This document shows, one piece after another, positions 840-16,690 of a stretch of DNA of 16,690 bases. Source of the stretch: Octopus sinensis (lineage: Eukaryota); the NCBI RefSeq assembly GCF_006345805.1, contig NW_021825134.1, forward strand, positions 1-16,690, read 5' to 3'. The first letter of the stretch is position 1, and every line of letters begins with the position of its first letter. The translations under genes were made by a program, and so were the position numbers. A model generated the notes under the pieces. It was not told the DNA's origin, made no database searches, and saw only the letters and a list, made by a program, of their open reading frames with translations.

Positions 840-970
840 TACTCTTTTACTTGTTTCAGTCATATTATTATTATCATAATTATTATTTATTTTATATATA
901 TTATATATATATATATATACTCTTTTACTTGTTCCAGTCATATTATTATTATCATAATTATTATTATTTA
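840..970 (-). repeat. Two tandem copies (period 78 bp) of a SINE 3' tail plus AT-rich segment
   Basis: TACTCTTTTACTTGTT(T/C)CAGTCATATTATTATTATCATAATTATTAT starts at 840 and 918. The first ~23 nt are the reverse complement of the SINE tail seen at 12622-12648. Confidence 0.8.
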
Positions 971-1965
971 TAATATATATAAGATATATATATATATTAT
1001 ATAATATTATATAAATACATATACATATATATATATACATATATATATACATATAATACATATACATATAATACATATATACATATACACATATTATATA
1101 TACATATACACATAATAATATAATATATACATATATACATATATTACATATACATATATACATATACATATATATACATATATACATATATATACATATA
1201 TACATATATATATACATATATACATATATATACATATATACATATATATACATATATTAACATATATACACATATATACATATATATACATATATATACA
1301 TATATACACATATATACATATATAATAATATATACAATATATATACATATATATATACATATATATATACATATATATATACATATACATATATCTATAC
1401 ATATATATATATCATATATATATATACATATATATATACTAACATATATATATATATATACATATATATATACTATTCCTATACATACATATATACATAT
1501 ATATACATATATATATATACATATATATACATATATATATACATATACATATATAACATATATATTATACATATATATATACATATATATACATATATAC
1601 ATATATATATACATTATATATACATATATACATATATATACATATATATATACACATATACATATATATATACTATATATATACATTATATATAATATAA
1701 TATATACATATATATATAATATACATATATATTATAATATATACATATATATAACATATATATATACATATATTATACATATATATACATATATATATAC
1801 ATATATATACATATATATATACATATATATACATATATATATATATACATATATATATATAGATACATATATATATTATATACATATATATATATACATA
1901 TACATAATATATATATATACATATATATATATACATATACATATCATACATATACATACATATAC

Positions 1966-1998
<33 letters not shown>

Positions 1999-2161
1999 CA
2001 TATATATATACATATATATATAATATACATATATATATATACATATATATATATATACATATACATATATATACATATACATATATATACATATACATAT
2101 ATACATTATATAATATACATATATATATATATACATATATATATACATATATATATTATAC

Positions 2162-2192
<31 letters not shown>

Positions 2193-3217
2193 CATTATAT
2201 ATATAATATATATTATATATACATATAATATACATATATTACTATATATATATATACATATATATATATACATATAATAATATACATAATATATATACAT
2301 ATATATACATATACATATATTACTATATATATATATACATATATATATAATACATATATATACATATATATACATATACATATATATACATATATATATA
2401 CATATATATATACATATTATATATACATATATATATATATACATATATATACATATATATATATAACATATATTACATATATATATCATACATATATATT
2501 ACATATATATATACATATATATATATATACATATATAACATATTATATATATACATATATATCATATATCTATATATACATATATATACATATATATATA
2601 TATACATATATATACATATATATAATAATATATAATATACATATATATATACATATATATACATATATATATATACATATATTATATATATACATATATA
2701 CATATACATAGATATATATATAACATCTATACATATACATATATACATATACATATATATACATACAATATACATATACATAATAATATCTATACATATA
2801 TATATATACATATACACAGATACATATATATATATACATATACATATACATAATATACATATACATATATACATAGACATATACATATACATAGATGCAT
2901 ATACATATATACATACACATATATACATACTATATATATACATACATATATACATACATATATACATACATACATATATATATACATATATACATATACA
3001 TATATATATACATACATATATACATATATATATACATACATACATATATATATACATACATATATACATACATATATACATACATACATATATATATACA
3101 TACATATATACATATACATATATCATATATATATATACATACATATATACATACATATATACATACATATATACATATACATATATATATACATACATAT
3201 ATATATATACAATATAC

Positions 3218-3270
<53 letters not shown>
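971..3270. repeat. ~2.3-kb compound microsatellite (TA)n/(TATATAC)n/(CATA)n
   Basis: Almost only A/T with interspersed C on the + strand and very few G. It generates all the Y/I/M/C/V-rich ORFs in the track. Confidence 0.95.
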
Positions 3271-3275
<5 letters not shown>

Positions 3276-3330
3276 AAATAAATAAAAATAATAATTATGA
3301 TAATAATATGACTGAAACAAGTAAAGAGTA
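3271..3330 (+). repeat. Inverted copy of the 840/918 SINE-tail plus AT unit
   Basis: ATAATAATTATGATAATAATATGACTGAAACAAGTAAAGAGTA is the near reverse complement of the 840 unit. Confidence 0.8.
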
Positions 3331-3331
3331 C

Positions 3332-3395
<64 letters not shown>

Positions 3396-3404
3396 CATAC
3401 TCTC

Positions 3405-3618
3405 TACTCTTTACTTTTTTCAGTCATTTGACTGTGGCCACGCTGAGCACAGGCTTTAGTCAAGCAAATCAACCTCAGGACTTATTCTTTGTAAGCCTAG
3501 TACTTATTCTATCGGTCTCTTTTGCTGAACTGCTAAGTTATGGAGACGTAAACACCACCATTGGTTGTCAAGTGATGTTGTGGGGACAAACACAGACAAC
3601 AATACACACACACATACA

Positions 3619-3652
<34 letters not shown>

Positions 3653-3824
3653 TACATATATACGATGGGCTTCTTTCAGTTTCCGTCTACCAAATCCACT
3701 TACATGGCTTTGGTCAGCCGAGGCAATAGTAGAAGACACTTGCCCAAGGTGCGATGCAGTGCGACTGAACCTGGAACCATGTGGTTTGTAAACAAGCTAC
3801 TTACCACTCAGCCACTCCTGCACC
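3405..3824 (-). mobile_element. Full-length tRNA-derived SINE (family A) with internal (CA)/(TA) tract
   Basis: Reverse complement aligns end to end with the copy at 12296-12648: tRNA-like head GGAGTGGCTGAGTGGTAAGTAGCTTG...GGTTCCAGGTTCAGTC, body and GACTGAAAAAAGTAAAGAGTA tail. Confidence 0.85.
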
Positions 3825-3956
3825 TTTTAAAAAGAATATTTGCATAGCATTCAAATACAAGAGGCATATTCCTTGTTTCTGCCTGAGAGACAGAGACAGT
3901 CAGAAACAAGGAAATTGCCCCTTGTATTTGAATACTATGCAAAAATTCTTTTAAAA
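3825..3956. repeat. 132-bp near-perfect palindrome (MITE-like foldback)
   Basis: Arms of ~60 bp, TTTTAAAAAGAATATTTGCATAGCATTCAAATACAAGAGGCATATTCCTTGTTTCTG and its near reverse complement, around an ~11-nt loop. Confidence 0.85.
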
Positions 3957-4151: not shown

Positions 4152-5063
4152 TACACACAAAAGTCACCCAAAAGAAACTGGAATTTTGCTTGCAATATTA
4201 TTTTATTCACCTAGTTTTACATTTTTACACTTTTATCACCTTTAAAGTATTCTACATTTGAAGCAATGCATTGGTCTAGACGCGTTTTCCACTGTTGAAA
4301 GCTATCCTAGAACTCTTGCAGAGTGATGCTTTTTAATGCCACCATTTTTTTTCTTCACCTTTTCCACATCTGCAAATTCCATAGCACCAGCTTTTTGTCA
4401 TCAGTAATGACCTTCGAAAAAAGGTCCAGATCAACTTCCAACTGTTCTTTCAGTTCACAACACGCATTCAGTCATGACTGTTTTTGATCTTCTGTGAGCA
4501 AGTGAGGCATAAATTTTGCTGCATCTCTTTTCATTCACAACTCCTTGCTCAAAATTTTTGGCAGGAGCTCCAGGACACACCAGACATATCAACAAGTTTG
4601 TCAGTTGTTTGGTGGCAGTCTTTCAAGATCAGTTCATGAATTTTCATGACATTTTCATTCATTCAGGGTTCAATGGGCACCCTGAACAAGGTTGGTTTCA
4701 AGCAACAAGTGACCATTCCTAAAGCATGAAAACCACTCATAAACTTGTGTTTTGCTCATGGCAGCATCCTTGTAAGTTGTTAGAAGCATAATAACTGTTT
4801 TGGCTGCCATTTTCCCCAGCAGTAAACAGAATTTCATGGAAGTACATTACTCCTTTGCTTCAATCATCGCAAAATATCGATGAACAGGGGAGAAGCACTG
4901 CAAAGCATAGATACACCACATGGCAGTAGGACTACACTTCATTCTGCCAGTCAGTTTACTGATGTTTAAGGGTGCATCAAGTGGCTTCTAGTAGCAGAAG
5001 CCTGAACTACAACAGGCTTGTCCCACAGAGAACGTTTCTTGTTACTTTTGGGTACTGCTCGTA
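4152..5063 (-). mobile_element. Internally deleted, decayed mariner (Tc1/mariner) DNA transposon
   Basis: Minus-strand translation gives mariner-like NENVMKIHELILKD, SGVSWSSCQK, CELKEQLEVDLDLFSKVITDD and C-terminal QQWKTRLDQCIASNVEYFKGD, with stops and frameshifts. Degenerate TIRs share ACCCAAAAG.AAC..GAA at ~4152-4183 and 5036-5063. Both ends abut TA-rich repeats. Confidence 0.9.
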
Positions 5064-5782: not shown

Positions 5783-6440
5783 CAATACGAAATTACATTA
5801 CTCTCATCCTTCATTATAACCAATTCTTTATTTACTTATATATTTGAACTGCTAATCTTTAATATAATGGTGTTCATATTTTTCTTATTGATATCAACCC
5901 CTATATTTCATAAACTCTGTCTATAAATCTCCTTTTAGTTTCACTTTGTTACTATTTTTTCTCTTTCTTTTCAATCTTTTATTTTCGATATTACTAATGA
6001 TAAATATATGATTTTCCTTTCCTTATACCTCAGCTATCTACTAATTATTTTTTAATATCTTAATAAGTTTCCTTTCTCTTCTTAGAAAACCATCTTATTA
6101 ATTTCTATTAATCTTATTCTTATTGTCTTCCATACTTTAAGATTATTTTCTTTAAATATTTACTTATATCTTCAAACTTTTTATTTTTTAAACTTAATAT
6201 TGTCCATATTTTCTTGTTGATATCAATCCCTATTTTTCGTAAACATTGTCTCTAAAAACTTTTATTCAGTTTCAGTTTGTTATTTTTTCTCTATTCTTAC
6301 AATCTTTTATTTTCTGGGTTATTAATGATAAATATATCACTTTCCTTCTCTTATACTAATAATATCTACAAGTTACTTTTCTTTATATTTCTAAAATTCC
6401 CTTCCCTTTGTTAGAAAACTGTCTTATTATTTTCTATTAA
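5783..6440. repeat. Diverged tandem duplication, ~329-bp unit x2
   Basis: GATATCAA at 5890 and 6219, and TTCTATTAA ending at 6111 and 6440, give a constant 329-bp offset. Identity is roughly 70-80% by eye. Confidence 0.8.
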
Positions 6441-9239: not shown

Positions 9240-9472
9240 AGGCGGCGGGCAGGCAGAAACATTAGCATGCCAGGTGAAATGCTTAGCGGTATTTCGTCTG
9301 CCATTACGTTCTGCATTCAAATTCTGCCAAGGTTGACTTTGCCTTTCATCCTTTCGGGGTCGATAAATTAAGTACCACTTACACACTGGGGGTCGATGTA
9401 ATCAACTTAATCCCTTTATCTGTCCTTGTTTGTCCCCTCCATGTTTAGCCCCTTGTGGGCAATAAAGAAATA
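9240..9472 (+). mobile_element. tRNA-derived SINE (family B), nested insertion with 11-bp TSD
   Basis: tRNA-like head with A-box-like GGCAGAAACATTAGC and B-box-like GCATTCAAATTC, and an A-rich 3' end. TSD AGAAACAGAAA at 9229-9239 and 9473-9483. Confidence 0.85.
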
Positions 9473-9491
9473 AGAAACAGAAAGAAGCCCA

Positions 9492-9571
9492 TTGTGTGTG
9501 TGTATCTTTGTGCACATATCTTTGTGTGTGTGTATCTTTGTGCACATATCTTTGTGTGTGTGTATCTTTGT
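9492..9571. repeat. 30-bp tandem repeat (~2.7 copies) in the SINE variable region
   Basis: TTGTGTGTGTGTATCTTTGTGCACATATCT with period 30. Confidence 0.9.
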
Positions 9572-9879
9572 TTCTCCTCACCACCACTTGGTGTTGCTGT
9601 GTTTATGTCCTCATAACTTAGTGGTTTGGCAAAAGAGGTTGACAAAAAAAGTACCAAGTTTCAAAAAATGAAAAAAAGTAAGTACTGGAATCAATTCATT
9701 CAAGTAAAAGGTGGTGCTCTAGCATGGCCACAGTCTAATAACTGGAACAAGTAAAAGATAAAAGTCTCCTCAAGTTAATGCTAGATCTAATAGAATACTT
9801 CTCATCTACAACTGCAGAAGAGGGCATCAGTGATACACAATCCTGACACAACTCAAACTACATCTTATCTCTAATTTTC

Positions 9880-12231: not shown

Positions 12232-12295
12232 ACTCTTACATATACATGTGTATATGTGCCTGTACACTACATACATATATAAGTATGGATGTAGA

Positions 12296-12648
12296 GACGT
12301 AGGAGTGGCTGTGTGGTAAGTAGCTTGCTAACCAACCACATGGTTCCGGGTTCAATCCCACTGTGTGGCACCTTGGGCAAGTGTCTTTTACTATAGCCTT
12401 CGGCCAATTTGGTAGACAGAAACTGAAAGAAGCCTGCCGTGTGTGTACGTTTGTGTGTTTGTGCTTTGTCCCCCTAACATCGCTTGACAGCTGATGCTGG
12501 TGCGTTTATGTCCCCGTAACTTAGCGGTTCGGCAAAAGAGATCGATAGAATAAGTACTAGGCTTCCAAAGAATAAATCCTGGGGTTGATTTGCTCGACTA
12601 AAGGTGCATGGCCACAGTCAAATGACTGAAACAAGTAAGTAAAGAGTA
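12296..12648 (+). mobile_element. tRNA-derived SINE (family A), near full length
   Basis: Head GACGTAGGAGTGGCTGTGTGGTAAGTAGCTTGC with B-box-like GGGTTCAATCCC, 3' stem-loop CAGTC-AAAT-GACTG and tail GAAACAAGTAAGTAAAGAGTA. Confidence 0.9.
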
Positions 12649-13031
12649 TACACAAACACATTTTATATATAGATGTATATATATATATGTATATAGTATT
12701 TATATACTTATATACCTATATATCCGTCAATGGTCAAACATATTCATCCAACTCATGAGCACATCTTCTTGACTCTCTGACTCTTCATTATTCTTCTCCT
12801 TTTTCTCTTCCTTGTCTCTCCTGGACTTTCCTCTAATACCCAACAAAAGATTACTAATGATTTGTAGGGACATGGTATTTCATCATCAACCATAATATAA
12901 TGTATATGAAACATTTTTATAAATCAATAACGTGTTCTACTGTGTTAGCAGTGCACTTTACATCACTTGTTATGGTTAGCTCTACAGATATTCTTTAGAA
13001 ATTATAGCTAGCACTGTTTTTTGTAATGCTA

Positions 13032-13148
13032 TTTCATTTCTGAGATCGAAGATGTAAAATGGACATATATGCTATATTTCAGGAGGTTTTGCCCATTCCA
13101 TAGCACCCATCTCATTCTTTGTTTACATCTGACATCTCAGATATGAAA
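13032..13148. repeat. Imperfect 117-bp hairpin (old MITE or foldback relic)
   Basis: Nested complementary blocks TTTCAT/ATGAAA, TCTGAGAT/ATCTCAGA, AGATGTAAA/TTTACATCT and TGCTAT/ATAGCA. Confidence 0.6.
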
Positions 13149-13633
13149 CATCTGCTAACACAGTAGAACGTGGTACTGATGTCTAAAAACATTTAATATC
13201 TTTTATAGTATATTATGGTTGCATAACAAAATACTGTGTCGTCCCTAAAGGTCATTAATATTTACATACCAGCTTCCAGGAATGTGTTTAATATGTAAAA
13301 TTGGAATATCCAATAATGTTACGCTGCTATATTTAGTGGCTATTCAAACAATGTGTTCATAGGCAATTAAAGAGTTAGATAGGAGATGAAGGGACAAAAT
13401 CTCCTGAAATATAGCATATACACCCATTACCCTATTTTCATTCTTGATCTCATTGATTGTTTACATCTGTTGTTTTGGATGTGAAATGTCATAACAAAAG
13501 TCAGTGTTAGTTAGAATTTCTACAGAACATCTATAGAGACAACCTTAACAAGTGACAAAAGATTACATCCAAAACATTATACATTTACTCTTTAACTATC
13601 TATCTGTAATTCTTTTCTTTTTCTAACTGTCAA

Positions 13634-13667
<34 letters not shown>

Positions 13668-13904
13668 AGAAATATTGAATTTCTAAATCTCTCGTAGAGA
13701 CATGTACGGTGGTGGGGCGATAGAATGGTTGTATACTGTCAATCTAACAGGAACGTGACAGTAGGGGGTACACCACCGCTGTATAGCCCTAGGAAGTATC
13801 GAATGCCTCCTGATAGCTTTGACACATTTTTTCCTGTGTCCTTATATAGATATATAGAATTACGAAGCCGAGGCAAATATCACCAGCTGACCGGTGTCTG
13901 CTAC

Positions 13905-13950
13905 TCTAGGCCAATGAAGGACAACGATCCTGAAACATGGTGTCCCTAGA
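13905..13950 (+). ncRNA. Type I hammerhead, E1 copy 1 (G5A core mutation, likely inactive)
   Basis: TCTAGG-CCAATGA-AGGA CAACGA TCCT-GAAA-CATGGTG-TC-CCTAGA; GTC triplet 13942-13944. Confidence 0.8.
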
Positions 13951-14268
13951 TGCAGTTCTGGCAGCTGGGGGTGTTTGTCTCCCCTTCGTATATCTATATA
14001 AGGACACAGGGAAAAAATGTGTCAAAGCTATCAGGAGGCGTTCGATGCTTCCTAGGGCTATACAGCGGTGGTGTACCCCCTACTGTCATGTTCTTGTTAG
14101 ATTGACAGTATACAACCATTCTATCGCCCCGCCACCGTACATGTCTCTACGAGAGATTAGAAATTCAATATTTCTTATTTTGATAATCAGTGAATAAGCT
14201 TCACTGAATATAGATATATAGAATTACGAAGCCGAGGCAAATATCACCAGCCGACCAGTGTCTGCTAC

Positions 14269-14314
14269 TCTAGGCCGATGAAGGACAACGATTCTGAAAC
14301 ACGGTGTCCCTAGA
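14269..14314 (+). ncRNA. Type I hammerhead, E1 copy 2 (CCGAUGA core, U4C variant)
   Basis: TCTAGG-CCGATGA-AGGA CAACGA TTCT-GAAA-CACGGTG-TC-CCTAGA; 6-bp stem I; GTC triplet 14306-14308. Confidence 0.85.
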
Positions 14315-14482
14315 TGCAGTTCCGGCAGCCGGGGGTGTTTGTCTCCCCTTCGTATATCTATATAAGGACACAGGGAAAAAATGTGTCAAAGCTATCAGAA
14401 GGCGTTCGATGCTTCCTAGGGCTATACAGCGGTGGTTTACCCCCTACTGTCACATTCTTGTTAGATTGACAGTATACAACCA

Positions 14483-14484
<2 letters not shown>

Positions 14485-14528
<44 letters not shown>
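14485..14528. repeat. (CT)n(TA)n microsatellite at the right end of E1
   Basis: CT run followed by a TA run. Confidence 0.9.
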
Positions 14529-14534
<6 letters not shown>

Positions 14535-14541
14535 ATGACAT

Positions 14542-15020
14542 AAGGGATGTGCTCAAGGGAATGTAGGACAGGGCCACCCGCGCCAACCTCATCAACAGTA
14601 CAGTTCTACCTGCAATGTTATATGGTAGTGAAACATGGGCTACCACAAAGAGAGAAGAGCAGAGACTGGTAACGGCTCAAAGAGAATGAAAGGTCAATGC
14701 TCAGTATCTCGTTGAGAGAGCACATCAGTAGCGAGATCATCAGAAAGAAATCCGGCATGAGGGATGTCATCGCAGAGTATACACGTAGCAAGTTTAGATA
14801 GGCTGGACACGTCGCCCGGCTCACCGATAATCGGTGGACCCGCGCAGTTGTCGAATGATACCCGTGCGAGCAGAAACGACCACCCGGAAGTTACGATTTC
14901 AGGAGGACGATTGGGATCACGTGGATGAGAAAGGCGCGATCCAGAGAGGAGTGGACAGTGTGCTGTGACCAGTGGTGTCAAATGGACGCCTGACAGACTG
15001 GTTGGTCATGGTGAAGGTGA
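14542..15020 (+). pseudogene. 5'-truncated RTE-clade LINE, C-terminal ORF region and 3' end
   Basis: VLPAMLYGSETW (14603-14638), R*AGHVARLTDNRWTRAVVE*YP..KRPPG and WMRKARSREEW, with W-to-stop changes and a frameshift. Followed by (TA)n. Confidence 0.9.
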
Positions 15021-15269
15021 TATATATATATATATATACAGGATGCAGTGAATAAATTGTCGTCTAAATTATGGAAAAATGAAAATAACACTGACAGGGA
15101 TAGGCTTATTGCCCAGAGATAAAAGGATGGTTGCAGGCACATGTTTGTAGCTCAAAACCCATTGACAGTGCGACAATTACCCTACCTTCCCTGCAGTAGC
15201 CAAAGGACTTATACAAAATAGAGTAGAAAGTAGTATTGGCCTAGGTAATTTGCTCAAAAATGAGCTAAG

Positions 15270-15830
15270 AGAAAGAAGTCATGGTGGAGTTGTGATGTAT
15301 GCTTGTGAAGATGACCTTTAACCTTGTTGTAAGATTCAAAACTCAGTCTGTGACACACACATAGTACATTTAAAGCAACATGTGGTAATATGCACATATC
15401 ATCCACCTGATGCCTCAAAATTATAAAGTAAATTTGAGTAAAGCTTCAACGCATTAATGGACTTCTGATAAGCAACTCAATTTCCACACTCAAATGGCTT
15501 AAAGGAGACATAATCTTAGGAATGACATACAAAGAATGCAATCAAATAAGACCAATGCTTGACCACACAAAGAAAATATTCCCGGAACAAACCATACTTT
15601 TTCCAACCAGAAAAAATAGCATCTTAGGTTTCTGCTTCATGAATAGTGTAGAATTTATCCACAATGTGAAGGTATCGGTGATAATTTTCTCAGACCATAA
15701 CATAATAGAACTATTAGGACTAATTAACGATGTATTTTACACAGATAACACCCAAACCCTATCTAGTCTGAACTTGTACAAGGCTGACTGGAAGTCAATT
15801 GAAAACTATACACTTAAACAGAATTGCCTC
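15270..15830 (+). pseudogene. Decayed APE endonuclease region of a CR1/Jockey-like LINE ORF2
   Basis: HGGVVMY (15280-15300), TYHPPD (15394-15411) and DF (15460) in one frame, then EQTILFPTRKNSILG, FSDHNII and LNLYKADWKSI in ORF 15522-15851. The clade call is approximate. Confidence 0.75.
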
Positions 15831-16099
15831 AAAAAGTCTTTCTATGTGTGACATTGATATCATATTCAAAGAATGTAAACTATATACATTAAATTTATCA
15901 CAGAGAGAAGAGCCAATATGCACAAAAAAAATTATCCTTAAGACATGAGCATCCTTATGAGACAGAATAAAGATCTTAAATCATTTAAGTCAGTGGTACC
16001 CAAACTTTGGCAGGCTGCTGTCCTATTGGTACTCAGGTTACGTTTTTAGCCCCTGATCCTCCCTACTCACCACGACAAACATAGACCACTTTCTGCAGC

Positions 16100-16131
<32 letters not shown>

Positions 16132-16423
16132 GACTATATGTACATATATATATATATATATATATATGAATATACATATATGACTATATGTACATAATAG
16201 AAATATTAAAATTACTAAGTCTCTCTAAAGGAGATTACGGCAGCGTTACTGGATATTAATAGTTATCGCCATACTAATATGGCAGTCTATAAATAAGACT
16301 AAAGCTGTCACTGATTAGCTCCAAGAGGCTGTCGCCTCTAGCTAGCTATATGACACACGAACCTGCGTCCATTACAACCTTCGAACAGGGGAGGTCAGCC
16401 GCTTCACCTTGCTAGTCAGACAT

Positions 16424-16464
16424 CTGCAGACATGTTTCAGGGTTGTTGCCCTTCATCAATGCAG
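16424..16464 (-). ncRNA. Minimal type I hammerhead in E2 (UUGAUGA core, C3U variant)
   Basis: Minus strand reads CTGCA-TTGATGA-AGGG CAACAA CCCT-GAAA-CATG-TC-TGCAG, with palindromic ACATGT stem III and predicted cleavage between 16429 and 16428. It sits at the apex of hairpin 16379-16509. Confidence 0.85.
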
Positions 16465-16621
16465 CGTAGTCAGAACCAGCAGGTGTCGCTACTGACCCTC
16501 TGTTCGAAGATTTTATTTACCTAGTTACTGTGGAATACATCCACTTGTTTTCAATAATAGAAATATTAAAATTACTAAGTCTCTCTAAAGGAGATTATGG
16601 CAGCATTACTGGATATTAATA

Positions 16622-16651
16622 AAGGGCAACAACCCTGAAACATGTCTGCAG
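16622..16651 (+). ncRNA. Truncated inverted copy of the E2 hammerhead lacking the 5' core strand
   Basis: AAGGGCAACAACCCTGAAACATGTCTGCAG; the upstream CTGCA-TTGATG is absent. Confidence 0.75.
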
Positions 16652-16690
16652 CTGATGTCTGACTAGCAAGGGGAAGTATGGCGATAACTA

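What the first reader, a model, noticed from the sequence alone, without database searches (positions are those of the whole stretch)
13665..16690. Two diverged members of one ~360-nt hammerhead-bearing structured RNA family (retrozyme/viroid-like) with compensatory base changes
Seen in sequence: the E1 unit (+, 364 nt) and E2 unit (-, 360 nt) are colinear but well diverged, and they keep the same ordered hairpins. (1) The HHR is at the apex of a long stem, with stem II AGGA-CAACGA-TCCT vs AGGG-CAACAA-CCCT (A-U to G-C covariation). (2) GACACA/TGTGTC (14003-14023) vs GACGCA/TGTGTC (16352-16369, minus). (3) AGGAGGC/GCTTCCT (14033-14053) vs AGAGGC/GCCTCT (16324-16339). (4) Both have a TCTC...GAGA hairpin followed by TTAG(T)AA.TT.AATATTTCT. 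(5) GTGAA/TTCAC (14190-14204) vs GTGGA/TCCAC (16530-16544), a second A-U/G-C swap. Established: metazoan retrozymes are non-coding tandem units of a few hundred nt with type I HHRs that produce circular RNAs, and minimal HHRs also occur in Penelope-like elements. Inference: this is a structure-constrained retrozyme-like family that spreads through a circular RNA using a reverse transcriptase supplied in trans. I cannot tell whether it has been described in this lineage.
Basis: partly seen in the sequence, partly recalled or inferred. Interest (0 to 1): 0.92.

Follow-up and report, generated by a model that had tools for sequence, protein, structure and literature searches.

The report
Decayed hammerhead retrozyme insertions, Penelope-style
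The window holds two old insertions of a small non-coding mobile element (about 360 bases) that carries a hammerhead self-cleaving RNA motif and a conserved RNA fold; this is a known kind of animal "retrozyme", and both insertions look as if Penelope-like retrotransposon machinery made them.

Summary
E1 (364 nt, + strand) and E2 (360 nt, - strand) are colinear at 53-60% identity, z = 17 against shuffles. Both carry a type I hammerhead-like motif at the tip of a 43-48 bp interrupted stem. Both fold far better than shuffles as circles (z about -7). The substitutions that separate them preserve the fold (permutation z about -6.5). Seven hammerhead-proximal pairs changed on both sides and still pair.

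No copy has the canonical CUGANGA core: E1b has CCGAUGA, E1a CCAAUGA, E2 UUGAUGA. No Rfam hammerhead model matches. These are therefore probably decayed or impaired copies, and 9 of 17 differences within E1 are CpG transitions.

Each locus is also not a plain tandem. On the + strand each reads (TA)n microsatellite, then an antisense copy starting at the same homologous 3' terminus (...AATATTTCT(T/A)TTAT), then a switch at a short shared stretch, then a sense copy. Partial tandem, adjacent inverted 5'-truncated copy and a (TA)n target are the published signature of Penelope-like element integration. The window holds no RT or GIY-YIG coding sequence.

Verdict: non-autonomous, PLE-mobilised non-LTR retrozymes, a new member of a known kind. 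Circular RNA, cleavage activity and genome-wide copy number could not be tested.

The parts
13634..13667 (.). (TG)n(TA)n microsatellite next to the 3' terminus of the inverted E1 copy. Presumed target and primer side of the E1 insertion.
   Evidence: Sequence read.
13665..13854 (-). Inverted, 5'-truncated E1 copy. It runs from the conserved 3' tail (rc ...TTCAATATTTCTTAT at 13665-13679) up to the 5' arm of the long stem. Positions 13844-13854 are shared with the direct copy (palindromic microhomology TATATAGATATA).
   Evidence: I1 (149 nt, 97% complementary to 14010-14158) and I23 (13827-13854 / 13989-16).
13844..14207 (+).
   Evidence: (D2).
13906..13949 (+). Hammerhead-like motif E1a. Core is CCAAUGA (U4C and G5A), stem II AGGA/UCCU, helix III ACA-UGG-UGU. 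Predicted cleavage after C13944.
   Evidence: 2 core mismatches.
14144..14178 (+). Conserved 3' tail of E1 (TCTC-GAGA hairpin followed by TTAGAAATTCAATATTTCTTAT). 14178 is the homologue of the position where the inverted E1 copy and the E2 array end against microsatellite.
14208..14489 (+). E1 unit b, partial (282 nt, 96% to unit a). It ends 53 nt short of the canonical terminus and abuts (CT)n(TA)n.
   Evidence: (D2).
14270..14313 (+). Hammerhead-like motif E1b. Core is CCGAUGA (U4C only), stem II AGGA/UUCU with one G-U, helix III ACA-CGG-UGU. Predicted cleavage after C14308.
   Evidence: 1 core mismatch; 0 expected by chance.
14484..14534 (.). (CT)n(TA)n microsatellite bounding the E1 complex on the right.
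16100..16193 (.). (TA)n-rich microsatellite next to the 3' terminus of the E2 array.
16194..16553 (-). E2 full unit (360 nt). Its 3' terminus ...AATATTTCTATTAT lies at 16194.
   Evidence: (D3).
16424..16464 (-). Hammerhead-like motif E2. Core is UUGAUGA (C3U), stem II AGGG/CCCU. Helix III is minimal (A15.1-U16.1 capped by the palindromic CAUG loop; ACAUGU is self-complementary, the dimer type). Predicted cleavage after the C at 16429.
   Evidence: 1 core mismatch.
16554..16621 (-). Partial upstream E2 copy (unit positions 293-360, 97%), giving a 1.19-unit head-to-tail array.
   Evidence: D3.
16615..16690 (+). Inverted E2 copy. It starts inside the hammerhead core (ATTAATAAAGGGC...), overlaps the partial copy by a 7-nt shared stretch, carries a 126-nt internal deletion relative to the full unit (E2 positions 152 to 279), and runs off the window.
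   Evidence: I6, 40 nt, 93%; E2 94-152 then 279-294.

Best explanation
E1 and E2 are two diverged subfamilies of a short (360-364 nt), non-coding, non-autonomous retroelement of the metazoan non-LTR retrozyme kind. Each unit encodes a type I hammerhead at the tip of a long interrupted stem, a branched domain of hairpins, and a conserved A/U-rich 3' tail.

Proposed cycle, all steps inferred:
1. Transcripts longer than one unit are cut by the hammerhead after GUC. E1 has a 3-bp helix III and could act as a monomer. E2 has only the palindromic CAUG loop and would act as a dimer.
2. The monomers are ligated into circles by a host tRNA ligase.
3. A Penelope-like element's endonuclease and RT nicks a (TA)n microsatellite and primes on the conserved tail ...AAUAUUUCU(U/A)UUAU.
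4. The RT copies more than one unit length, which gives the partial tandem.
5. It then switches strand at a short shared stretch, which gives the adjacent inverted 5'-truncated copy.

What the sequence shows directly: the family relationship, the hammerhead-like motif, structure-preserving divergence, the shared 3' terminus, the microsatellite flanks, and the antisense-switch-sense layout at both loci.

The copies in this window are old and decaying. They differ mostly by CpG transitions, and each hammerhead has at least one core deviation. They are best read as relics, not active sources.
For: - Family relationship: z = 17 against shuffles; blastn colinear at 60%.
- Hammerhead: descriptor hits with at most 1 core mismatch only at E1b and E2, and 0 in 300 shuffles. 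In stems I and II, 96.7% of cells pair, 7 pairs changed on both sides, and slid controls gave 25-43%.
- Fold as a circle: MFE -125.9 and -125.4 kcal/mol, z -7.3 and -6.8. The complementary strands are weaker at -112.2 and -108.9.
- Structure-preserving divergence: permuting the 168 E1/E2 differences among the differing columns gives -88 +/- 6 kcal/mol, with a minimum of -107 (z about -6.5).
- Independent MFE folds give the same architecture in both units.
- Non-coding: no homologue of the 86-aa ORF and no Pfam hit.
- GC content is 44% and 42.5%.
- Architecture: inverted arms at 97% and 93%; partial tandems.
- Shared terminus: both antisense copies begin at the homologous terminus TTTCT(T/A)TTAT directly next to (TA)n.
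- Literature: retrozyme definition (PMC7229834). PLE hallmarks of partial tandem, inverted 5'-truncated copy at the 5' end and (TA)n bias (PMC8557442). Retrozymes as PLE derivatives (bioRxiv 10.64898/2026.07.22.740005).
Against: - No copy has the invariant CUGANGA core.
- No Rfam hammerhead model matches, even on 106-nt slices at E<=10.
- Only two lineages are available, so covariation rests on one comparison, and the tested structure was derived from these same sequences.
- MAFFT registers in the middle of the long stem are ambiguous, and many cells count as 'broken' there.
- Strand asymmetry is modest: 12 vs 8 and 11 vs 8 G-U pairs.
- No other copies could be retrieved anywhere. Copy number, activity and association with a PLE in this genome are therefore unknown.
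- The right end of the E1 array is not at the canonical terminus.
- The window contains no PLE.
Confidence: 0.75

Rival explanations
1. The units are severely 5'-truncated remnants, or pseudo-LTRs, of an autonomous Penelope-like element whose ORF lies outside the window or was deleted. On this reading they are not an independent short element.
For: The PLE-type architecture and the hammerhead in a terminal repeat (PMC8557442). The 2026 preprint proposes that truncated PLE ends seed retrozymes. E2 runs off the window edge.
Against: The head-to-tail junction (tail ...TTAT followed directly by TTGA(T/A)AA...) recurs at 364 and 360 nt, so the copied template was unit-length. E1 is bounded by microsatellites on both sides and has no ORF. 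No RT or GIY-YIG signal appears anywhere in the window.
Confidence: 0.12
2. A DNA-level repeat, such as a foldback or palindromic element or a small satellite. Its hairpins would reflect DNA mechanisms (snap-back, inverted duplication) and not selection on an RNA, and the hammerhead would be a fossil with no role.
For: Large DNA palindrome at 13658-14185 with 97% arms. Both strands fold well (z -4.2 and -5.4 for the complement). Core deviations are present in all copies.
Against: The hammerhead is on one strand only, with helix covariation between subfamilies. The HHR strand is 14-16 kcal/mol more stable in both families. There is a defined homologous 3' terminus at (TA)n in two independent insertions. 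There are at most 1.8 units per array and no terminal inverted repeats bounding a unit.
Confidence: 0.06
3. An endogenised copy of an exogenous viroid-like or delta-like circular RNA replicon.
For: The size, the rod-and-branch fold and the hammerhead are reminiscent of such replicons.
Against: Two diverged subfamilies were each inserted with the same retrotransposon-type architecture. There is no ribozyme on the complementary strand, no ORF with homologues, and the sequence is chromosomal between host repeats.
Confidence: 0.03
4. A chance resemblance of AT-rich repeats to a hammerhead.
For: No Rfam match.
Against: 0 descriptor hits in 300 shuffles, 0 expected pattern hits, and z = 17 for the alignment.
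Confidence: 0.01

Closest known systems
Metazoan non-LTR retrozymes (Cervera & de la Pena 2020, PMC7229834), for example the 350-390-nt Mytilus galloprovincialis repeats and the 330/350-nt axolotl repeats
   Same: Unit size. Type I hammerhead with stem I open into a long self-paired stem. No ORF. GC below 50%. Head-to-tail repeats. Predicted highly paired circle. Two helix III styles (a stable invertebrate type in E1, a single pair plus palindromic tetraloop in E2), as described for invertebrate versus amphibian motifs.
   Different: Only 1.2-1.8 units per locus. Every copy has a core deviation. No sequence similarity to a published retrozyme could be tested. Expression and circularity are unknown. 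An adjacent inverted 5'-truncated copy is present at both loci.
Penelope-like elements (Penelope/Poseidon, Neptune, Naiad; PMC8557442)
   Same: Partial tandem (pseudo-LTR logic), an inverted 5'-truncated copy directly at the 5' end, insertion into (TA)n microsatellites, and a hammerhead in the repeated terminal part.
   Different: No RT or GIY-YIG ORF. The whole element is about 360 nt. The hammerhead has full-size stems I and II with an internal loop, unlike the minimal PLE variant (though E2's helix III is of the minimal type).
Hammerhead-bearing satellite or SINE-like repeats (newt satellite 2, Schistosoma Sm-alpha, cave-cricket pDo500). These names are from my own knowledge and from PMC7229834.
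   Same: Repeats of about 330-500 nt with a type I hammerhead. From memory, the UAC internal loop in stem I and the 6-nt CAAxxA loop 2 resemble the Schistosoma-type motif.
   Different: Those form long arrays or very many dispersed copies. Here two short complexes are visible. The resemblance of the loops is recalled from memory and was not tested.
Plant LTR retrozymes and Avsunviroidae viroids
   Same: A small structured RNA with a hammerhead.
   Different: Those have type III hammerheads. Retrozymes of plants have LTRs, a PBS and a PPT. Viroids have ribozymes in both polarities and no DNA stage. None of these features is present here.

Membership tests
Hammerhead ribozyme, type I | Invariant core C3-U4-G5-A6-N7-G8-A9 ... 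G12-A13-A14 ... A15.1/U16.1-H17 | tested here: inconclusive
   GAAA, A15.1-U16.1 and C17 are present in all copies. The first core strand is CCGAUGA (E1b), CCAAUGA (E1a) and UUGAUGA (E2), so there are 1-2 deviations per copy and none is canonical.
Hammerhead ribozyme, type I | Three helices around the core, with stem I open and stems II and III capped | tested here: met
   Descriptor hits with a 5-bp stem I, a 4-bp stem II with a 6-nt loop, and helix III of 3 bp (E1) or 1 bp plus a CAUG loop (E2). There were 0 hits in 300 shuffles.
Hammerhead ribozyme, type I | Helices maintained by compensatory change | tested here: met
   20 pairs, 96.7% paired, 7 changed on both sides; slid controls 25-43%. 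Only two lineages are available, and the structure was derived from these same sequences.
Hammerhead ribozyme, type I | Match to a curated covariance model (Rfam hammerhead families) | tested here: not met
   No hammerhead hit at gathering score or at E<=10, including on 106-nt slices.
Hammerhead ribozyme, type I | Self-cleavage after H17 | not testable with these tools
   Needs in vitro transcription of monomeric and dimeric constructs.
Metazoan non-LTR retrozyme | Head-to-tail repeats of 150-450 bp, each with a type I hammerhead | tested here: met
   Periods of 364 and 360 nt. E1 has two hammerhead copies. E2 has one plus a truncated inverted one. The arrays are short, at 1.8 and 1.2 units.
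Metazoan non-LTR retrozyme | No coding capacity and GC below 50% | tested here: met
   The 86-aa ORF has no homologues and no Pfam hit. GC is 44% and 42.5%.
Metazoan non-LTR retrozyme | Predicted stable, highly self-paired circular RNA | tested here: met
   Circular MFE z of -7.3 and -6.8, with 64-65% of bases paired. The fold is preserved across 47% divergence.
Metazoan non-LTR retrozyme | Expressed as linear and circular unit-length RNA | not testable with these tools
   No transcriptome is available. The source organism was not identified.
Metazoan non-LTR retrozyme | Multicopy in the genome and co-occurring with PLEs | not testable with these tools
   No further copies were found in the window or in the searchable collections. 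No eukaryotic genome collection is on hand.
Penelope-like element (autonomous) | ORF with a PLE-type RT and a GIY-YIG endonuclease | tested here: not met
   No RVT or GIY-YIG Pfam hit in any open segment of 50 aa or more. The only RT remnant is an RTE-type LINE C-terminus at about 14560-14900.
Penelope-like element (insertion signature) | Partial tandem, plus an inverted 5'-truncated copy at the 5' end, plus a microsatellite target | tested here: met
   compared with the description in PMC8557442.
Viroid / viroid-like RNA | RNA-only replicon, with ribozymes in both polarities (Avsunviroidae) | tested here: not met
   The sequence is chromosomal DNA between host repeats, and the hammerhead descriptor hits one strand only.

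The most novel reading that the evidence does not exclude
These two loci could be direct insertion-site evidence for how animal retrozymes are integrated. Two diverged subfamilies share a conserved A/U-rich 3' tail. Each was copied from that same nucleotide off a (TA)n primer, for more than one unit or with a strand switch at a short shared stretch. That is PLE-type target-primed reverse transcription with a U-turn. The tail would then be the long-sought motif that ties non-LTR retrozymes to a particular autonomous partner, possibly in a lineage where retrozymes have not been described. From memory, the flanking SINE-like repeat looks cephalopod-like; this was not verified.
Probability: 0.3. 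Interest if true: 0.5.

Novelty: new member of a known kind. Interest (0 to 1): 0.3.

Why it matters
Retrozymes are an abundant but poorly annotated source of small circular RNAs in animals, and standard RNA-family scans miss them, as Rfam did here. A 2020 review stated that metazoan retrozymes show no conserved motif that reveals which autonomous element mobilises them (PMC7761336). The homology link to PLE pseudo-LTRs has been shown only in Xenopus (2026 preprint). If the shared 3' tail, the (TA)n target and the antisense-switch-sense layout seen at both loci hold genome-wide, they would give mechanistic, insertion-level support for PLE mobilisation in an invertebrate. They would also give a simple annotation rule for such elements. 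In itself, the finding is an ordinary pair of decayed transposable-element insertions.

Tried and rejected
1. Rfam at gathering score on the whole window, at E<=10 on 13600-16690, and on two 106-nt slices. There was no hammerhead or other ribozyme. The only hits were microsatellite-driven miRNA look-alikes and weak snoRNA noise.

2. The spurious 86-aa ORF of E1 used as a handle to fetch other copies. It is not on record and has no homologues.

3. Degenerate hammerhead patterns scanned in metagenome, prokaryotic genome and viral contig collections. All gave 0 matches.

4. RNAalifold on the 7-row alignment with partial copies returned no structure because of the gaps. On 3 rows it gave 54 pairs, but the middle of the long stem is mis-registered by MAFFT. 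I therefore used independent folds, a substitution-permutation test and the well-aligned hammerhead-proximal helices.

5. Mirroring the HHR-strand structure onto the complementary strand gave unreliable energies because of non-standard pairs. I disregarded those values and kept only the MFE and G-U counts.

6. Organism identification failed. Window ORFs are not on record. The RT fragment hits RTE-type 'endonuclease-reverse transcriptase' proteins from turtles and unnamed ENA contigs, which says nothing about lineage. SINE-like repeat strings were not found in the paper library.

7. I considered a Pol III terminator (T4) at the E1 unit boundary. It is not conserved in E2, so I dropped it.

8. 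The within-E1 'covariation' (U15-A313 versus C15-G313) turned out to be independent CpG decay. I rejected it as evidence for RNA-level selection.
Full report
**1. What is in the sequence**

The window is AT-rich, microsatellite-laden eukaryotic DNA. It contains a 2.4-kb (TA)n tract and many other simple repeats.

In 13665-16690 two repeat complexes stand out.

The E1 complex on the + strand has three parts:
- an inverted piece at 13665-13854, 97% complementary to 13989-14178;
- a 364-nt unit at 13844-14207;
- a 282-nt partial second unit at 14208-14489, 96% identical to the first.

It lies between (TG)n(TA)n at 13634-13667 and (CT)n(TA)n at 14484-14534.

The E2 complex has:
- a full 360-nt unit on the - strand at 16194-16553;
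- a 68-nt partial copy of the unit's 3' end just upstream in that orientation, at 16554-16621 (97%);
- an inverted piece on the + strand at 16615-16690. This piece starts inside the hammerhead core, has a 126-nt internal deletion and runs off the window.

A (TA)n-rich tract at 16100-16193 abuts the unit's 3' end.

**2. Are E1 and E2 related?**

Yes. blastn aligns them colinearly over about 340 nt at 60% identity. MAFFT gives 53% over 356 columns. The semi-global score is 28, against 2.4 +/- 1.5 for 500 dinucleotide shuffles (z = 17). The reverse complement scores 5.

**3. The hammerhead**

The 25-nt block RATGAAGGRCAACRAYYCTGAAACA occurs four times, with none expected.

I wrote a full type I descriptor: 5-bp stem I, CUGANGA, 4-bp stem II with a 3-8-nt loop, GAAA, helix III, UH, and the return strand of stem I. 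Results were:
- no hit with a perfect core;
- E1b (14270-14313) and E2 (16424-16464, - strand) with one core mismatch;
- E1a (13906-13949) with two;
- none with at most 1 mismatch, and 0.013 per 13.3 kb with at most 2, in 300 dinucleotide shuffles.

The first core strand reads CCGAUGA in E1b (U4 to C). It reads CCAAUGA in E1a, where the extra G5 to A change is a CpG transition. It reads UUGAUGA in E2 (C3 to U).

Helix III differs between the subfamilies. E1 has ACA/UGU with a 3-nt loop. E2 has only A15.1-U16.1 capped by CAUG, so ACAUGU is self-complementary. This is the 'single base pair plus palindromic tetraloop' type that acts as a dimer in amphibian and PLE hammerheads (PMC7229834, PMC7761336).

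Predicted cleavage sites are after C13944, after C14308, and after the C at 16429 on the - strand.

Rfam finds no hammerhead at gathering score, at E<=10 over 3 kb, or on 106-nt slices. The motif is therefore hammerhead-derived beyond reasonable doubt. Every copy here is nonetheless non-canonical, and its activity is unknown.

**4. Structure and covariation**

Folded as circles, the monomers give -125.9 kcal/mol (E1) and -125.4 (E2). Shuffles give about -88 +/- 5.5, so z = -7.3 and -6.8. The complementary strands give -112.2 and -108.9, with z = -4.2 and -5.4.

Independent MFE folds share one architecture:
- stem I of the hammerhead continues into an interrupted stem of 43-48 bp, made of the 55 nt after and the 60 nt before the core;
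- a multi-branch domain follows, with the GACACA/UGUGUC and AGGAGGC/GCUUCCU hairpins;
- then a variable central part;
- then the UCUC/GAGA hairpin, the A/U-rich tail and the GUGAA/UUCAC hairpin.

The strongest test does not depend on alignment register. I permuted the residues at the 168 columns where E1 and E2 differ. This gives pseudo-E2 and pseudo-E1 with MFE -88 +/- 6 (minimum -107 and -105), against the real -125 (z = -6.7 and -6.3). The substitutions are therefore placed so as to keep the fold.

In the well-aligned hammerhead-proximal helices, 20 pairs are 96.7% paired and 7 changed on both sides. There are three such pairs in proximal stem I, two in distal stem I, one in the next helix and one in stem II. 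Slid controls give 25-43% paired and 0-2 such pairs.

By hand:
- UUCGUA/UACGAA versus UUCGAA/UUCGAA is a U-A to A-U swap;
- GUGAA/UUCAC versus GUGGA/UCCAC is an A-U to G-C swap;
- hairpin (3) lost one base on each strand;
- hairpins (2) and (3) otherwise show only one-sided G-U changes;
- hairpin (4) does not vary.

There are limits. Only two lineages exist, the structure was derived from these sequences, and MAFFT mis-registers the middle of the long stem. The preference for the hammerhead strand is modest: 14-16 kcal/mol, and 12 vs 8 and 11 vs 8 G-U pairs.

**5. Differences within a locus are decay, not selection**

Of 17 differences among the three E1 pieces, 9 are CpG transitions. An apparent U-A / C-G 'covariation' between the copies dissolves into independent CpG decay. 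The pieces of each complex thus descend from one insertion event and have since diverged by 3-4%.

**6. Insertion architecture**

The inverted E1 piece ends, in its own orientation, at ...TTCAATATTTCTTAT followed by (TA)n. The E2 array ends at ...TTTTAATATTTCTATTAT followed by a (TA)n-rich tract. In the E1/E2 alignment these are the same homologous position, within a base or two. It lies at the end of the best-conserved block outside the hammerhead.

The head-to-tail junctions (E1 ...TTAT|TTTGATAATCAG, E2 ...TTAT|TGAAAACAAG) show that the copied unit was itself 364 or 360 nt long.

Read on the + strand, both loci have one layout: (TA)n, then an antisense copy starting at that terminus, then a switch, then a sense copy. 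The antisense copy is 0.5 unit in E1 and 1.19 units in E2. The switch falls within a short stretch shared by both orientations (13844-13854, TATATAGATATA, part of the stem's own palindrome; and 16615-16621, ATTAATA). The sense copy is 1.77 units in E1 and at least 76 nt in E2.

The sense run of E1 ends at a non-canonical point (CAACCATTCT) against (CT)n(TA)n. A variable 5'-type end would look like this if the whole complex is one continuous cDNA. That reading is an inference.

Partial tandems, an inverted 5'-truncated copy immediately at the 5' end, and a bias for (TA)n microsatellites are the published hallmarks of Penelope-like element insertions (PMC8557442). The window contains no PLE coding sequence. 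Open segments of 50 aa or more give only a mariner HTH_48 hit. The only RT remnant, at about 14560-14900, is an RTE-type LINE C-terminus.

**7. Comparison with what is known**

Size, type I hammerhead, lack of ORF, GC of 42-44%, head-to-tail repeats and a highly paired predicted circle match the metazoan non-LTR retrozymes. These are described for cnidarians, molluscs and amphibians and reported bioinformatically in rotifers, flatworms, annelids, crustaceans and insects (PMC7229834).

PLEs have been proposed as their mobilisers (PMC7761336). A 2026 preprint reports homology between Xenopus retrozymes and PLE pseudo-LTRs (10.64898/2026.07.22.740005).

The elements here are therefore new members of a known kind. 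What may be mildly new is the insertion-level evidence, namely the shared 3' tail, the (TA)n target and the U-turn layout. PMC7761336 stated that metazoan retrozymes show no conserved motif pointing to their autonomous partner.

**8. What could not be done**

No other copies could be retrieved, and the organism was not identified. From memory, the SINE-like repeat at 3400-3830 resembles abundant cephalopod repeats, but that is a lead and not a result. Copy number, canonical-core master copies, the PLE partner, expression, circularity and cleavage all remain open.

**9. Verdict**

The interpretation as a structure-constrained retrozyme-like family is largely right, but three qualifications apply:
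- the copies are decayed relics with non-canonical cores;
- 'viroid-like' is unsupported;
- the kind is already known.

I put interest at about 0.3.

Noticed in passing
window 965-3399: A (TA)n-dominated tract of about 2.4 kb (1242 copies, 75% matches). GC falls to 9-15%.
   Followed up: no
window 3400-3830 (+), 12240-12610 (-), about 9380-9670: A SINE-like repeat in at least two or three copies (arms 88-90% complementary). Each copy has an internal CA/TA-type microsatellite and a tRNA-like 'GGAACCATGTGG / GAACCTGG' segment. From memory it resembles abundant cephalopod repeats, but this was not verified. String searches in the paper library found nothing.
   Followed up: partly
window about 4400-4846 (-): Degraded mariner/Mos1-type transposase fragment with stops. 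The HTH_48 domain hit has E = 5e-8.
   Followed up: partly
window about 14560-14900 (+): C-terminal fragment of an RTE-type LINE reverse transcriptase, with stops and frameshifts, lying between the two retrozyme complexes. The best hits are 'endonuclease-reverse transcriptase' proteins, 62-79% identical, from turtles and unnamed ENA contigs.
   Followed up: partly
window about 15166-15850 (+): Open segments, including a 137-aa stop-to-stop stretch containing ...FSDHNIIE..., that look to me like a LINE apurinic-type endonuclease remnant. There is no Pfam hit, so this is unconfirmed.
   Followed up: partly
window 5829-6440: An AT-rich tandem duplication of about 328 bp (two copies, 76% identical) with no hammerhead descriptor hit.
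   Followed up: no
window 12852-13555: Several inverted repeats of 55-109 nt at 73-81% identity just upstream of the E1 complex, possibly another foldback-like element.
   Followed up: no
window 9492-9571: A perfect 30-bp x 2.7 tandem repeat (TTGTGTGTGTGTATCTTTGTGCACATATCT) inside or next to a SINE-like copy.
   Followed up: no
window 13665-14489: Differences among the three E1 pieces are dominated by CpG-to-TpG/CpA transitions (9 of 17). This suggests the host methylates this repeat DNA.
   Followed up: yes
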